Virus record (IMG/VR): IMGVR_UViG_3300033892_000027
Span: 1 to 7,836 of that record
Length of the DNA: 7,836 nucleotides
Reading direction: 5' to 3' (one strand)
Each line of letters opens with the position of its first letter. The stretch's first letter is position 1. Shown here in pieces: positions 380-7,809 of this stretch. The position numbers and the translations under genes are program-made. The notes beneath the pieces were generated by a model. It had not been told where the DNA came from. It searched no databases and was given only the letters and a program-made list of their open reading frames with translations.

Positions 380-421
380 TAGAATTGAGTTTTATATTAA
401 CATTTTATGAATATAATAATT

Positions 422-1822
422 ATGGGTAAGAAGGTAGGTAACAGAAATATCGCATCTATGAAGTATCATCTTTATCAAAAAGTATTGAATAGAAATACTT
501 TTCCCGCTTTTAGCACAATGTTTAACGCTGGAGTTTCATCAGTTTTGCCAACTCCACTTGAGAACATTTCAGTTCCTAAAGGTATAAATACTAATTATGG
601 AATTGCATATGCTACAATTATTTCAGCTTTACTTTCAGCTTTAAATAATTTAGCAATTTCTACATTTAATTCAAATGCAAATTCATTTAGTTTTCTACAA
701 TTAGGCCAAAGTGGAATTTTTGGACAAACTTCTGGTCTTGCATTTATTAATAGCTTTACAAAACTTTATGATAATTATGTAGAACTTTGCAGTGTACTTT
801 ATCAACCCGCGGTTTTCGATGAGACTTATTTTGATCTATCAGTTTTCCAGTCAGCAAACACAATTATCAATAGAAATCAAGCATGTGAAAAAATAGAACA
901 ATATTTTAATAGTTTAAGTTATTCAAATATTAGTATTGATCTTCCAACTTTGGGAATTGGAAATACTCAAATTCCAAATGTTGATAATTATTCATTATCA
1001 AATATCCAAAATACTGGAGTAGGCGATTTATTAAACACTCTAAATCTCAATTTTAATCAACTTCCAGATTTAGCAAAATTCATAGTTTCATTTATACCAA
1101 ATTTGAATGATATAATTAATAGTGGATTTGCTTTAGATGTTGGATGGTTAGACAGATGTGTTTTAGCTCCAGAAATTGAAGAAAGTCCAGAGTATAAAGT
1201 CCAGTTACAAAACGGTATGATTTTACAAAATTTTGCTAACGTTTTCGGAATGATATTAGATTATTCGCCTTTAGATTTATCAATTCTAATTCCAGAATTT
1301 AATCCAAACAATATCACACAATTAGATTTAGTTTCCATTTTGTCTGCTGATAAAACTGTAATTTCAATATTTGGAAGTTTGTTTAAACAACATTTATATG
1401 ACCCATCTCCTGGAGGAATAAACATAACTTACAGTTCTGAAATTGAAAATTATGCAGTTTCATATGAACAATTTTTACAAGTCCAAAGAATTGTAAACAA
1501 GAAATATTCTAATATATGGTATGCTAAAATGGTAGCTTCAGCAATTTTGGAAATTGCTAGATATCCTTATCAACAAAATTATAGTTATTCAACTGGAAAA
1601 AGAACACTTCCTTATAATGAATTTTTGAATTATTGGAAGAATAAGTGGTCATTTTATGGAATATCTGCTCAAGATTTACAATTTGCTCAAGAATATGGTG
1701 AGAAAATTCAAGGTCAAGCAAAAGTTGAAAATTCGATAAAATTAGCTCAAAAATCTGCAAAAGCTAAACAATATAAGCCAATTTTCTATTACAAAAACTT
1801 TAAAAATATAGCAAATAGATAA
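422..1822 (+). CDS. Minor virion structural protein (SIRV ORF486/488-like), ~466 aa
   Basis: Long ORF (track 407-1822). Start reassigned to ATG 422 because TTTTATAT at 390-397 sits ~25-32 nt upstream, as expected for a leaderless transcript. Basic N-terminus, N/S-rich body; size and position next to the ORF154-like gene match the rudivirus core gene. Confidence 0.75.
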   Translation: MGKKVGNRNIASMKYHLYQKVLNRNTFPAFSTMFNAGVSSVLPTPLENISVPKGINTNYGIAYATIISALLSALNNLAISTFNSNANSFSFLQLGQSGIFGQTSGLAFINSFTKLYDNYVELCSVLYQPAVFDETYFDLSVFQSANTIINRNQACEKIEQYFNSLSYSNISIDLPTLGIGNTQIPNVDNYSLSNIQNTGVGDLLNTLNLNFNQLPDLAKFIVSFIPNLNDIINSGFALDVGWLDRCVLAPEIEESPEYKVQLQNGMILQNFANVFGMILDYSPLDLSILIPEFNPNNITQLDLVSILSADKTVISIFGSLFKQHLYDPSPGGINITYSSEIENYAVSYEQFLQVQRIVNKKYSNIWYAKMVASAILEIARYPYQQNYSYSTGKRTLPYNEFLNYWKNKWSFYGISAQDLQFAQEYGEKIQGQAKVENSIKLAQKSAKAKQYKPIFYYKNFKNIANR

Positions 1823-2368: not shown

Positions 2369-2722
2369 TTACATTTTTCCACTTTTCTTTAGGTCATTTA
2401 ATAAATACTTTTTCAATTCACAAGTTGAACAATACTCTTTGTATAAGCGTTTTATTTCTGTTTTATCATTCTCAATATCAATTTGCGGTCTAATAATACA
2501 TCCTCCGCCTTTGCAAATTCTTAAATATTCGTTTTTCATGTATTCTTCATAATCTTTTTTCTTTAGAAAAATTACTTGAAATTCTTCAGAAATATCATCA
2601 TCACTTTCATGACTTAACTTGTAATGATGATCTAATTCTTCATAACTTGTAGCTACATAACTACATAATTTACAAAAAAGTAATTTATTTGAGAACTTAG
2701 TTTGAACTTTTTTATTTGTCAT
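2369..2722 (-). CDS. Zinc-finger protein (~117 aa): C2H2 finger plus a second Cys cluster
   Basis: CKLC-x12-HYKLSH C2H2 motif; later CKGGGC and CSTC. Start probably ATG 2722 (GGAGA Shine-Dalgarno, 32 nt from TATA as in the neighbouring gene) rather than 2734. Confidence 0.75.
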   Translation of the reverse strand: MTNKKVQTKFSNKLLFCKLCSYVATSYEELDHHYKLSHESDDDISEEFQVIFLKKKDYEEYMKNEYLRICKGGGCIIRPQIDIENDKTEIKRLYKEYCSTCELKKYLLNDLKKSGKM

Positions 2723-2751
2723 TTTTATCTCCATTATACATTTCGAAATCT

Positions 2752-3803: not shown

Positions 3804-4103
3804 TTATAACTTATTCGTCATTCTTTTTATATGAAATTTGATATAGTTGTCAAGTTTTAAATTTTCATCTTTCAAAATATTTGTACTATTTGCTTCTTTG
3901 CACAAAATTGCTAAATCTCTTAATAAAATTGCTTTTCTTCTAAATTGTAAATGATAATATGCTAAATGTATTGATAAATTTTTAGTTTTCATATTGCAAT
4001 ATGGACATCTTTCATTATGAAAATGTATTTGTGCGTGTTTTTTGAATTCTTTTTTTCCAGATATTGAAATTTTGCAAATATAGCAATAATAATATTTTGG
4101 CAT
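3804..4103 (-). CDS. Tandem C2H2 zinc-finger protein (99 aa)
   Basis: CYIC-x12-HAQIH and CPYC-x9-HLAYYH; AAGGTG Shine-Dalgarno inside the end of the upstream 41-aa ORF. Confidence 0.8.
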   Translation of the reverse strand: MPKYYYCYICKISISGKKEFKKHAQIHFHNERCPYCNMKTKNLSIHLAYYHLQFRRKAILLRDLAILCKEANSTNILKDENLKLDNYIKFHIKRMTNKL

Positions 4104-4295: not shown

Positions 4296-5303
4296 TCATT
4301 CTAAAAATCTAACATATAAATTATTAATGTCATATCTCTTAGCTAATTCTTTTAGATTTCTACTTCTTTCTTCTCTATCTTGAAGTTCACTAGCTATCAA
4401 TATTGCATTTACCATGTCATGAATATCAAATTTATGAATTTTCCATTTTTGACCATGAGTTTTGTCATAATATTCTTCAACTTCTGAAGATTTAATTAGT
4501 AAATTCCATTGCCATGAAGTAAATTCATCAAATGGCGGCATTAATTGATGAATGACCGGCGTTCCCATAGCCATACTTTCTAGAACTGGAAGTCCAAAGC
4601 CCTCAGTTCCTGAAGGAACTATCATATAATCCATAACTTTGTAAAATGCGAAAATGTAATCCCTAGGATTTAGCCCAAATTCGCTAACAAAATGAACATT
4701 TGCTGGAACTTCAAAATTCTTAAAGTCCTTATGAGAAATTACAAAGAAGTGAACTTTTTTGGCTAATTCTGGAATTTTAGTATTTATTTCTTGGAAAACT
4801 CTTATCATAAGATCCATATTCTTTCTTTTAGTTAAACCACTTACAATTCCAAATTTTATGGAATTTGGAAAATCTTTATCTAATTTTTGCTTTAATTGAA
4901 TAGCTAATTGTTCAGCTTTTTCTACAATTTCAAAATTAATGCCATGGAAAACTGGAAGATCAGTTTGTAAACCGACCTCTTGCAAATTTTGAGCTGTAAA
5001 CTTTGAATTTGGTATAAATATTATATTTTCTAATAGATATTGATTTACAATATTTGTATTAGGTATACCATCACAAGTTGTATAAAAGTATTTCTTACCT
5101 TTAAATTCTCTAAATGTATACAAATATGGATTTAATGAAGGAGGGTGAAATGGCATAAAAATTATTAATTTATCACTTTGTGGAATTAAATATGGATTTG
5201 TTGAAATTGTAACAATTTCACCATGATTTCTTAAAATATAAGCTATATCTTCTGAAACATTTCTTATAGATGAGTAATTCATAGTCAGGATTGTCGTTTT
5301 CAT
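4296..5303 (-). CDS. GT-B fold (GT4/group 1) glycosyltransferase, SIRV ORF335 homologue
   Basis: Signature PSGTEGFGLPVLESMAMGTPVI (E-x7-E), plus PNSKFT, HGIN and KRKN motifs. 335 aa, next to the capsid gene as in SIRV1/2. Confidence 0.95.
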   Translation of the reverse strand: MKTTILTMNYSSIRNVSEDIAYILRNHGEIVTISTNPYLIPQSDKLIIFMPFHPPSLNPYLYTFREFKGKKYFYTTCDGIPNTNIVNQYLLENIIFIPNSKFTAQNLQEVGLQTDLPVFHGINFEIVEKAEQLAIQLKQKLDKDFPNSIKFGIVSGLTKRKNMDLMIRVFQEINTKIPELAKKVHFFVISHKDFKNFEVPANVHFVSEFGLNPRDYIFAFYKVMDYMIVPSGTEGFGLPVLESMAMGTPVIHQLMPPFDEFTSWQWNLLIKSSEVEEYYDKTHGQKWKIHKFDIHDMVNAILIASELQDREERSRNLKELAKRYDINNLYVRFLE

Positions 5304-5310
5304 ATTAAGC

Positions 5311-5334
5311 TTTTAAATGTCATGACATTAAAAA
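5311..5334. promoter_or_regulatory. Palindromic bidirectional promoter (TTTTAAATGTCATGACATTAAAAA)
   Basis: Perfect 14-bp palindrome AATGTCATGACATT at 5316-5329 (24 bp with one mismatched pair) in the 36-bp gap between divergent ATGs 5303 and 5340. Each arm reads TATA-like followed by GTC. Confidence 0.7.
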
Positions 5335-5339
5335 ATATC

Positions 5340-5510
5340 ATGGACATCTTTTTATTTGAGTGTCCAGTTTGTAAAAGAATAACAAAAACTAGAAAAGCTA
5401 TGATTACACATTTGAAAAAACATCATCCAGGTGTAAGAATTAGTGATTGTAAAAGAATTAGTAAAAAAACTTATGAATATGTTGAAACAAAAGTAGAAGA
5501 TAATGATTAA
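5340..5510 (+). CDS. Small C2H2 zinc-finger protein (56 aa), SIRV ORF55-like
   Basis: CPVC-x12-HLKKHH. Located between the capsid and glycosyltransferase genes as in SIRV. Start 5340 fits TATA spacing; the track's 5322 start lies inside the promoter palindrome. Confidence 0.8.
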   Translation: MDIFLFECPVCKRITKTRKAMITHLKKHHPGVRISDCKRISKKTYEYVETKVEDND

Positions 5511-5609: not shown

Positions 5610-6014
5610 TTAGCTTACATATCCAGTTGGACTTCCAGTAATAATGTTGGTGACTGCGTCTAATACTGTAGGATTTGCATTAAACGCTGAAATATAATAT
5701 GCCTTCAATCCGTTAATCATATTAACTAGTGCCGGGCCACCGCCGAGTCTATTTAAAGCTCTAGCTACCTTAAGACCGAAACCTTGATAAATCGCTCTAT
5801 TGGGACCAGTTATTCCATATTCCGACAAAACTGAACTAACTTGTTCATTCACAGAAGTGAATTTTGGAACGTTAGTTTGGAAATTTTGTTGTGCAACTGG
5901 AGATACATTACTTAAAATTGTTGAAGCTACGGTAGGATTTGAAAATGATGCAAATTTTGCACTCCACTTAGCATATCTTTGACTATATGATCTTGGTGTT
6001 CTTCCTTTTGCCAT
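5610..6014 (-). CDS. Rudivirus major capsid protein (SIRV2 ORF134/gp26 homologue)
   Basis: 134 aa, near-identical to the remembered SIRV coat protein: RSYSQRYAKW, FSNPTVASTILSNVSPVAQQNFQTNVPKFTSVNE, YGITGPNRAIYQGFGLKVARALNR, ITGSPTGYVS. Confidence 0.98.
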   Translation of the reverse strand: MAKGRTPRSYSQRYAKWSAKFASFSNPTVASTILSNVSPVAQQNFQTNVPKFTSVNEQVSSVLSEYGITGPNRAIYQGFGLKVARALNRLGGGPALVNMINGLKAYYISAFNANPTVLDAVTNIITGSPTGYVS

Positions 6015-7118: not shown

Positions 7119-7265
7119 TTAACTATCATATGTTGTAGTATTTGGTCTCAAGAATTCCATTAGCGCTTGCCTAATTACTTCAGATCTGTTTAATTTATGA
7201 TTCATAGCATATTTATCAAGTTTTTGCAAAAGATCTTCTTCAACTTTAAACGTTATTACTCTCAT
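7119..7265 (-). CDS. 48-aa CopG-like ribbon-helix-helix protein ([48 protein letters not shown])
   Basis: Textbook RHH pattern (ITFKV strand, LLQKLDKYA helix, [10 protein letters not shown] helix). ATGA overlap with the svtR stop and a GGGGAG Shine-Dalgarno. Missed by the ORF track. Confidence 0.85.
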
Positions 7266-7420
7266 TTAACTCCCCTTTTCTGTAAATATTCTTCTAAAGC
7301 TTCTTCAATTGCCTCTGTTAAAGTTTTATTATTATTTGCACAATATACTTTCAGTTTTCTCTTTAATTCTTTATCTATATTTATACCGAAAACTGTTCTT
7401 TCCTTTTTAACTTTCTCCAT
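7262..7420 (-). CDS. svtR: SvtR-like RHH transcriptional repressor, 52 aa ([52 protein letters not shown])
   Basis: Matches remembered SIRV1 SvtR motifs VFGI-x-x-DK, LKVYCA-x-NN and AIEEA-x-x-EYLQKR. GAGG ribosome-binding site and TATA+GTC promoter at ~7452-7470. Missed by the ORF track. Confidence 0.88.
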
Positions 7421-7521: not shown

Positions 7522-7809
7522 ATGTCAACAATACAATATGCAGTAGAAGGATTTCTAGTACTGATGGGTGTGCTAATAGGCTCATATGTAGTTGGAGAAA
7601 TTGTACATCTCTACAATCAAAAGCAAGCAAATGAATCGTTCCAAATAGCAGTAGATCAAATGACAAAAAGTACAATTAGTGCAATAGAAAGTATTAAAGA
7701 TACCACTACTCTTGGCGTTAATGCATTATTGAATATGGATACTCTTTCAGATGTAAATGCATTAGCACAGAAAAAGCAAAGTTCTCAGCAACAGTCACAA
7801 AGTAAATAA
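7522..7809 (+). CDS. pvap: PVAP, virus-associated pyramid egress protein (SIRV2 P98 / STIV C92 family)
   Basis: N-terminal transmembrane helix followed by GEIVHLYN-x-KQ, DQM-x-KST and AIESIKDTT-x-x-G-x-NALLNMDTL-x-DVN, the conserved PVAP motifs. T-run at ~7814-7819 after the stop. Confidence 0.95.
   Translation: MSTIQYAVEGFLVLMGVLIGSYVVGEIVHLYNQKQANESFQIAVDQMTKSTISAIESIKDTTTLGVNALLNMDTLSDVNALAQKKQSSQQQSQSK

What the first reader, a model, noticed from the sequence alone, without database searches (positions are those of the whole stretch)
422..1822. The 466-aa minor virion protein appears to contain a split copy of the major capsid fold
Seen by eye within this window: the C-terminal part (from ~nt 1445) ENYAVSYEQFLQV...AILEIARY...FLNYWKNKWSFYGISAQDLQFA lines up in order and spacing with the MCP helices QNFQTNVPKFTSV...FGLKVARA...MINGLKAYYISAFNANPTVLDAV. 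The N-terminus MGKKVGNRNIASMKYHLYQKVL resembles the MCP DNA-binding arm MAKGRTPRSYSQRYAKWSAKF. Known: the SIRV2 MCP has a basic N-terminal arm plus a four-helix bundle that wraps A-form DNA. Inference: this protein is a diverged MCP paralogue with a ~300-aa insertion that could co-assemble at the helix ends as an initiator, terminator or tail-fibre adaptor. Identity is low, so this is a hypothesis, and I cannot check whether it has been published.
Basis: partly seen in the sequence, partly recalled or inferred. Interest (0 to 1): 0.72.

Follow-up and report, generated by a model that had tools for sequence, protein, structure and literature searches.

The report
Capsid-like domain in rudivirus minor protein

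Summary
The window is a Sulfolobus rudivirus, about 89% identical in DNA to SIRV9. ORF 422-1822 (+) is the orthologue of SIRV2 gp33/ORF488, a minor virion protein.

Compared directly with the window's own MCP (5610-6014, -), it shows no significant similarity: BLASTP E 0.085, hhalign probability 1%.

Intermediate sequences from metagenomes do establish the link:
- gp33 family to a distant subfamily: hhalign 98.4%, E 1e-14.
- Distant subfamily to a 368-aa positional orthologue: 98.0%, E 3e-13.
- C-terminus of that orthologue to rudivirus MCPs, residues 48-125: 96.5%, E 1e-9. PF12193 is its top Pfam hit.

The residue map through this chain gives offsets of 299-300, 295 and 301-302.

Two further results agree. 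An AF2 model of residues 296-466 has its best Foldseek TM scores against the AFV1 capsid proteins, although the E-values are not significant. One distant orthologue matches the AFV1 MCP family at E 0.004.

The N-terminal "arm" resemblance is at chance level, so the protein is a C-terminal MCP-like bundle behind a family-specific N-terminal region of about 335 aa, not a split copy.

A 2026 Microbiome paper already states that this rudiviral protein (Q8QL30) carries an MCP-related domain. A role at the virion ends remains inference.

The parts
422..1822 (+). Gene for the 466-aa minor virion protein, the orthologue of SIRV2 gp33/ORF488, SIRV1 gp25 (Q8QL30) and SIRV9 gp36.
   Evidence: ORF list. 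Matches phrog_7238 end to end, E 2e-263. 94% identical to the SIRV9 protein and 74% to SIRV2. SIRV2 annotation. SIRV9 annotates the same 422-1822.
390..399 (+). A/T-rich TATA-box-like element about 28 nt upstream of ATG 422. It favours 422 over 407 as the start codon.
   Evidence: Sequence read directly. Most homologues are 466 aa and start at the equivalent Met. The promoter role is inferred from the usual spacing of archaeal promoters.
422..493 (+). Basic N-terminal segment (aa 1-24; conserved R8, K14, K20).
   Evidence: Conservation in A1. No similarity to the MCP arm above reversed-profile controls.
800..853 (+). Conserved motif at aa 127-144 (A-x-F-D-E-T-x-F-D-x-S). It is shared with the distant subfamilies, where it reads K-I-E-K-x-x-Y-G...Y-Y-D-P.
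   Evidence: Invariant columns A130, F132, D133, S140. Aligned in hhalign between A1 and the distant subfamily. It is the strongest block linking the 368-aa group to the distant subfamily.
1124..1156 (+). Conserved motif at aa 235-245 (G-F-A-L-D-V-G-W-L-D-R) in the middle region.
   Evidence: Invariant G235, L238, D239, W242, D244, R245. The region around it is matched in all distant relatives (HMM positions 204-293).
1433..1726 (+). MCP-like helical bundle, aa 338-435. Predicted helices are 339-361, 365-379, 398-411 and 416 onward. Residues 334-421 map to MCP residues 37-120.
   Evidence: AF2 domain model with core pLDDT 83-96. Foldseek best TM and probability against AFV1 MCPs 3fbz and 3fbl. 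Chain of profile alignments. Residue map.
1727..1819 (+). Basic C-terminal tail, aa 436-466, with a conserved Y-K-P-x-F-Y motif. It continues the last helix. The tail is absent from the 368-aa relatives.
   Evidence: Alignment A1 (K440, Y451, K452, F455, Y456 invariant). Helix 416-455 in the model. The 368-aa proteins end right after the bundle.
5610..6014 (-). Major capsid protein gene (134 aa), the proposed parent of the bundle.
   Evidence: PF12193 E 1.2e-75. Matches PDB 6wq0, 3j9x and 3f2e.
4296..5303 (-). Glycosyltransferase gene. It lies between the MCP gene and the gp33-like gene in distant relatives too, so the linkage is conserved.
   Evidence: PF00534 and PF13692. MCP-GT-gp33-like order in L001, in L012, L013, L015, L017 and L018, and in L030 and L031.

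Best explanation
ORF 422-1822 encodes the rudiviral gp33/ORF488-type minor structural protein. Its last ~100 structured residues (aa ~338-435) are a diverged homologue of the four-helix bundle of the Adnaviria major capsid protein. This bundle sits behind a family-specific, mostly helical N-terminal region of ~335 aa and is followed by a short basic tail. The copy lacks the MCP's N-terminal basic arm, the part that wraps A-form DNA.

Shown here: the homology of the bundle, its register, and the conservation of the gene next to the MCP and glycosyltransferase genes.

Inferred: the bundle lets the protein take an MCP-like position in the capsid lattice by bundle-to-bundle contacts. Because it has no DNA-wrapping arm, it cannot propagate the helix. 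It would therefore sit where the helix starts or stops, at the virion termini, and its large N-terminal region would build the terminal plug or hold the gp38 fibres.
For: (1) gp33 family profile against a distant subfamily from metagenomes (17 loci plus P0122): hhalign 98.35%, E 1.1e-14, 366 columns running through the C-terminus.

(2) That subfamily against a 368-aa positional orthologue (L028, L029, L030): 98.0%, E 2.9e-13, 340 columns.

(3) C-terminus of the 368-aa proteins against rudivirus MCPs: 83% with E 8.6e-6, rising to 96.5% with E 9.6e-10 over MCP residues 48-125 once divergent MCPs are added. The reversed-profile control scores 8.7. PF12193 is the top Pfam hit for all three proteins: E 0.0024-0.024 for the full length and 2.7e-4 to 3.2e-3 for the C-terminus.

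(5) The C-terminus of the distant orthologue P0121 matches the AFV1 MCP family (phrog_18994) at E 0.0043 over profile positions 38-132. The match was reproduced with my own HMM, 94 columns. Against that HMM, P0121 scores above true rudivirus-type MCPs.

(6) An AF2 model of aa 296-466 (pLDDT 72, core 83-96) has its highest Foldseek probability and TM scores against AFV1 MCPs: 3fbz with probability 0.38 and TM 0.52, and 3fbl with TM 0.61 over all 82 residues.

(7) The gene order MCP-GT-gp33-like is conserved in distant lineages.

(8) Literature: Gp33 is a minor SIRV2 virion component (PMC5537682). [quoted passage not shown]
Against: - Direct comparison of the window protein or its close family with MCPs is not significant. 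The window protein has no PF12193 hit even at E <= 10.
- The Foldseek E-values are 3.4-6.3, and the SIRV MCP structures themselves are not among the hits.
- The decisive link rests on three nearly identical 368-aa sequences from one sampling project, so it is effectively one lineage.
- The Pfam scores of those proteins (15-21.5 bits) are below the gathering cut-off of 25.2.
- Nothing here tests location in the virion, binding to the MCP, or function.
Confidence: 0.78

Rival explanations
1. The C-terminal domain is a generic up-and-down helical bundle. Its likeness to MCPs would then be chance or convergence, not common descent.
For: Direct BLASTP and hhalign are not significant. The Foldseek hits all have E > 1 and include unrelated bundles such as 2rld, TIPE proteins and designed proteins. 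The same P0121 fragment gives chance hits at E ~0.08 against PDB sequences.
Against: Three consecutive profile links lie at 96.5-98.4% probability, and their aligned regions overlap. PF12193 is the top Pfam hit of the 368-aa orthologues. The sequence evidence and the structure evidence independently pick the same AFV1 MCP family. The register agrees with an independent by-eye alignment.
Confidence: 0.08
2. One reading: a split MCP whose DNA-binding arm is at residues 1-22 and whose bundle is at the C-terminus, separated by a ~300-aa insertion.
For: Both N-termini are basic. R8 and K20 are conserved in both families. At profile level the 1-21 block scores in the top 0.3% of random placements.
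Against: hhalign of the N-terminal 60-170 residues against MCP profiles scores 13-15, against 11-13 for reversed controls. The distant subfamilies score 8-9. A block picked by eye from about 60,000 possible placements is expected to reach the top 0.3%. The intervening region is conserved across all relatives as the body of the protein itself.
Confidence: 0.07
3. The bundle is MCP-derived, but the protein does not act as an end cap. It could instead nucleate assembly on the genome, act as an assembly chaperone that binds free MCP, or be scattered sparsely along the rod.
For: The homology evidence is the same. The only stated fact on location is 'minor amounts' in virions. In rudiviruses that have a second MCP paralogue, that paralogue is reported not to be incorporated into virions (PMC10541130).
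Against: The protein is detected in purified virions according to the literature. It is conserved in every rudivirus searched (42 records), beside the structural genes.
Confidence: 0.25

Closest known systems
Rudiviral minor structural protein SIRV2 gp33 (ORF488), SIRV1 gp25 (Swiss-Prot Q8QL30), SRV ORF464; PHROG 7238; called the 'MCP-like MSP' in Microbiome 2026
   Same: Orthologous over the full length: 74% identity to SIRV2, 94% to SIRV9, phrog_7238 E 2e-263. Same neighbourhood, with the MCP and glycosyltransferase genes nearby. The same predicted MCP-related domain.
   Different: Nothing of substance; it is a new sequence variant.
Adnaviria major capsid protein (SIRV2 P134, PF12193; structures 3F2E, 3J9X, 6WQ0; AFV1 ORF132/ORF140, 3FBL, 3FBZ, 5W7G)
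   Same: Four-helix bundle in the same helix order. The transitive alignment covers MCP residues 37-120. It is encoded in the same gene cluster.
   Different: It lacks the contiguous basic N-terminal arm that wraps A-form DNA. It carries ~335 extra N-terminal residues and a basic C-terminal tail. It is a minor rather than a major component. There is no direct Pfam hit.
Second MCP paralogue of lipothrixviruses, ungulaviruses and tristromaviruses (heterodimeric capsomers)
   Same: A second MCP-fold protein encoded beside the first. P0121 and the structural model resemble the AFV1 MCPs more than the SIRV MCP.
   Different: Those paralogues are small (~130-170 aa), abundant, and keep the DNA-binding arm (ICTV profile). 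This protein is large and minor.

Membership tests
Rudiviral gp33/ORF488 minor structural protein (PHROG 7238) | Full-length sequence match to the family | tested here: met
   phrog_7238 E 2.2e-263 over residues 1-466 against profile 1-463. 63 homologues found, and all named ones are rudiviral.
Rudiviral gp33/ORF488 minor structural protein (PHROG 7238) | Conserved position near the MCP and glycosyltransferase genes | tested here: met
   Window: MCP at 5610-6014, GT at 4296-5303. Same layout in SIRV2 and SIRV9. MCP-GT-gp33-like order in distant loci.
Rudiviral gp33/ORF488 minor structural protein (PHROG 7238) | Physical presence in virions in minor amounts | not testable with these tools
   Reported for SIRV2 Gp33 (PMC5537682). 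Orthologues are annotated 'virion protein' (SIRV3) and 'structural protein' (SMRV1).
Adnaviria MCP fold (PF12193 / PF21660) | C-terminal four-helix bundle homologous to MCP residues ~50-130 | tested here: met
   Chain of profile alignments at 98.35%, 98.0% and 96.5%. Map to MCP residues 37-120. Four predicted helices with core pLDDT 83-96. Best Foldseek TM against AFV1 MCPs, but with E > 1.
Adnaviria MCP fold (PF12193 / PF21660) | Direct match to the Pfam model above its gathering score | tested here: not met
   The window protein or its C-terminus has no PF12193 or PF21660 hit at E <= 10. The 368-aa relatives reach 15-21.5 bits against a cut-off of 25.2.
Adnaviria MCP fold (PF12193 / PF21660) | Basic N-terminal arm contiguous with the bundle, which becomes helical and wraps A-form DNA | tested here: not met
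   The alignment begins at MCP residue 37. The segment before the bundle (aa 296-337) has few basic residues. The protein's own N-terminus shows no similarity above controls.
Adnaviria MCP fold (PF12193 / PF21660) | Forms dimeric capsomers that polymerise along the DNA as the major component | not testable with these tools
   The literature describes this protein as a minor component.

The most novel reading that the evidence does not exclude
gp33 is the subunit that ends the rudiviral helix. Its bundle would pair with an MCP subunit as a pseudo-capsomer, and the missing DNA-wrapping arm would stop further polymerisation. Its N-terminal ~335 residues would form the plug that anchors the three gp38 fibres.

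A bolder corollary is that the bundle descends from the second MCP of heterodimeric adnaviruses. Rudiviruses would then never have been true 'single-MCP' viruses; they would have moved the second paralogue to the termini.
Probability: 0.3. Interest if true: 0.65.

Novelty: already known. Interest (0 to 1): 0.35.

Why it matters
Filamentous A-DNA viruses of archaea are built from one protein fold, and how their helices are started, stopped and fitted with receptor-binding fibres is unknown. An MCP-derived domain without the DNA-wrapping arm, in a conserved minor virion protein, is the obvious candidate for the lattice-to-terminus adaptor. This turns an open question into concrete experiments on SIRV2.

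The domain prediction itself is already in print (Microbiome 2026). This window therefore adds a confirming orthologue, a residue-level map and a set of bridging metagenomic sequences, not a new discovery.

Tried and rejected
- Direct BLASTP and family-profile hhalign against the window MCP were not significant.
- Their best local match, P466 362-388 against MCP 24-50 (score 24.5, against <= 15.9 for 30 column permutations), lies in a register incompatible with the validated map. It is left unexplained.
- The full-length AF2 model was too poor to use (pLDDT 53). Its Foldseek searches gave nothing beyond the SRV orthologue.
- Sequence searches of the PDB with the protein or with the family profile gave only chance hits to eIF2B-beta at E ~0.6.
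- An HMM search of 1.84 billion representative proteins found no MCPs, only 10 family members.
- The gp33 C-terminal profile against AFV1 ORF132/ORF140 single sequences scored 11-13, which is no signal.
- The N-terminal arm was tested in the close family with four window lengths and in all three subfamilies. None scored above reversed controls.
- phmmer of the P0121 C-terminus against the PDB returned chance matches to a Legionella protein at E ~0.08 and no MCP.
- A viral-contig scan for P0121 relatives found none.
- The search for AFV1 ORF140 homologues gave only three near-identical proteins, too few for a deep profile.
- Scanning full-length family members against PHROGs did not recover the phrog_18994 hit that the 173-aa P0121 fragment gave, so that single hit is fragile on its own.

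Full report
**What the window is.** The 7.8-kb window is AT-rich, with GC of 20-32%. At DNA level it matches only Sulfolobus islandicus rod-shaped viruses. The best match is SIRV9 (Usarudivirus, Yellowstone), at 89% identity over 95% of the window.

ORF 5610-6014 (-) is the major capsid protein (MCP): PF12193, E 1e-75. ORF 4296-5303 (-) is a GT-1 glycosyltransferase.

The ORF in question runs from ATG 407 or ATG 422 to the stop at 1822. Most homologues are 466 aa and start at the Met equivalent to 422. A TATA-like run at 390-399 lies about 28 nt upstream of 422. SIRV9 annotates exactly 422-1822.

The protein matches phrog_7238 end to end, E 2e-263, and has no Pfam family. It is found in all 42 rudivirus records searched. 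It is 74% identical to SIRV2 gp33/ORF488. SIRV2 Gp33 is reported to be a minor virion component (PMC5537682).

**Checking the observation directly.** The quoted strings are at aa 342-354, 374-381, 401-422 and 1-22 of the protein, and at aa 43-55, 79-86, 99-121 and 1-21 of the MCP.

Taken by itself the resemblance is not more than chance:
- Ungapped BLOSUM62 scores are 19, 9, -9 and 0.
- The best BLASTP alignment has E 0.085 and a different register.
- hhalign of a 25-sequence gp33 family profile (A1) against a 23-sequence MCP profile (A2) gives probability 1%.
- An HMM of the family searched against 1.84 billion representative proteins found 10 proteins and no MCP.

As a yardstick, known MCP homologues in other families are hardly detectable by sequence either. 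The rudivirus MCP profile hits AFV1 ORF132 at E 0.17 in the PDB, and at hhalign probability 19%. A negative direct comparison therefore decides nothing.

**Structure prediction.** The full-length AF2 model was poor (pLDDT 53) and all-helical. Foldseek gave nothing for it.

A model of aa 296-466 with a 57-sequence alignment reached pLDDT 72. Its confident core (pLDDT 83-96) consists of helices 339-361, 365-379, 398-411 and 416 onward.

Foldseek against the PDB gave no hit with E < 1. However, the highest probability (0.38) and the highest target-normalised TM scores belong to the two capsid proteins of AFV1. These are 3fbz (ORF140, TM 0.52, 124 columns) and 3fbl (ORF132, TM 0.61, rmsd 4.6 over all 82 residues). 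On its own this is only suggestive.

**Bridging sequences.** The HMM search gave two very distant relatives, P0121 (402 aa) and P0122 (381 aa). P0121 lies in the order MCP, glycosyltransferase, P0121.

The C-terminal 173 aa of P0121 hit phrog_18994 at E 0.0043, over residues 60-156 against profile positions 38-132 of 140. phrog_18994 is the AFV1 ORF140/ORF132 family. I reproduced this match with an HMM built from AFV1 MCPs: 94 nearly gapless columns, P0121 289-384. Among 616 ORFs from all fetched loci, P0121 scored higher against that HMM than true rudivirus-type MCPs did.

A metagenome scan with P0121 plus P0122 returned 25 loci. Seventeen of them encode full-length relatives of 424-465 aa. 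Several have a PF12193-type MCP about 1.2 kb upstream.

Three further loci (L028, L029, L030) encode a 368-aa version in the same position, after the MCP and the glycosyltransferase.

**The chain.** Three profile-profile links connect the window's family to the MCPs:
- gp33 family against the distant subfamily: hhalign 98.35%, E 1.1e-14, 366 columns that include the C-terminus.
- Distant subfamily against the 368-aa group: 98.0%, E 2.9e-13, 340 columns.
- C-terminus of the 368-aa group against rudivirus MCPs: 83%, E 8.6e-6. After adding nine divergent MCPs from the loci: 96.5%, E 9.6e-10, 77 columns, MCP residues 48-125.

The reversed-MCP control scored 8.7. Independently, PF12193 is the top Pfam hit of all three 368-aa proteins, with E 0.0024-0.024 for the full length and 2.7e-4 to 3.2e-3 for the C-terminus. 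The scores are below the gathering cut-off. MCP hallmark residues are matched there, in the pattern L..YG..GP.R..Y..F.

A profile of the distant subfamily without P0121 still finds the last-helix motif of AFV1 MCPs, at P 0.003.

**The register.** I carried window residues through the three alignments. Residues 338-360 map to the MCP at offset 300/299, residues 361-387 at offset 295, and residues 406-421 at offset 302/301.

Residues conserved in both families coincide under this map: R380/R85, W409/Y107, Y412/F111 and L419/L118.

**What is not supported.** The N-terminal 'arm' has no signal. hhalign scores are 13-15 for the close family, against 11-13 for reversed controls. They are 8-10 for all three subfamilies against an extended MCP arm profile, where reversed controls score 5-12.5.

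The alignment to the MCP begins at MCP residue 37, so the arm is missing rather than relocated. The ~335 residues ahead of the bundle are conserved through all relatives, including motifs at aa 127-144 and 235-245. They are the body of the protein, not an insertion.

**Mechanism.** This part is inferred, not shown. A bundle that can make MCP-type contacts but has no DNA-wrapping arm suits a subunit that docks on the lattice without extending it. That points to the ends of the rod, where fibres of gp38 are attached. ICTV notes that the terminal structures are made of minor structural proteins.

[quoted passage not shown] Q8QL30 is SIRV1 gp25 and belongs to the same 90% cluster as SIRV2 gp33. 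The central inference is therefore correct but already published, as a prediction from HHpred and AlphaFold3.

**Caveats.**
- The decisive third link depends on three near-identical sequences from one sampling project.
- hhalign was run without secondary-structure scoring.
- The Foldseek E-values are not significant, and the SIRV MCP structures did not appear among the hits.
- The phrog_18994 hit was seen only with the fragment, not with full-length P0121.

Noticed in passing
window 1505-1585 (aa 362-388) versus MCP aa 24-50 (window 5865-5945, - strand): The strongest direct profile similarity between the two families joins gp33 aa 362-388 to MCP aa 24-50, which lie in the MCP's N-terminal arm. 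The hhalign score is 24.5 (P 0.003), against <= 15.9 in 30 column permutations. This register conflicts with the validated bundle map and is unexplained.
   Followed up: partly
L028:834-1940, L029:800-1906, L030:3725-4831; MCPs at L030:2218-2583 and L031:2901-3302: A divergent rudivirus-like lineage in metagenomes has a short (368-aa) gp33-like protein whose C-terminus still looks plainly like an MCP. Its own MCP carries a Y-G-L-D-P-D-I-L-D motif like that of AFV1 MCPs and also weakly matches PF25647 (SFV1 VP4).
   Followed up: partly
L008-L021, L025, L027 (for example L015:4968-6284, with an MCP at L015:3355-3729): About 17 metagenomic loci encode a 424-465-aa gp33-like subfamily, 22-29% identical to P0121, with a basic R-L-x-R-L-G-I-P tail. 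Several have a 124-133-aa PF12193-type MCP upstream. These probably represent rudivirus-like groups that have not been described.
   Followed up: partly
clusters of P0045 and of the MCP (P0070, P0107): Copies of the rudiviral gp33 and MCP proteins are deposited under bacterial names (Streptomyces, Aquimarina, Microbacterium, Paenochrobactrum, 'MULTISPECIES [Bacteria]'). This most likely reflects contamination of those assemblies.
   Followed up: no
alignment A3 members: Fifteen of the 57 family members weakly match phrog_28284 (unknown function; best E 0.0038). I did not examine which part of the protein matches.
   Followed up: no
window 2369-2734 (-), 3804-4103 (-), 5322-5510 (+), 7119-7420 (-), 7522-7809 (+): Other genes in the window: three small C2H2 zinc-finger-type proteins, two adjacent small ribbon-helix-helix-like proteins (the SIRV9 counterpart of one is annotated 'Arc-like repressor'), and the 95-aa orthologue of the pyramid-forming egress protein annotated in SIRV9.
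   Followed up: partly
L004:601-1986 (-) and L005:1857-3242 (-): In the contigs that carry the 421-aa relative P0116, a 461-aa ORF with no Pfam hit lies between the MCP and glycosyltransferase genes. Large ORFs of 1101 and 596 aa follow the Holliday junction resolvase gene, in the positions that ORF1070 and ORF564 occupy in SIRV2.
   Followed up: no
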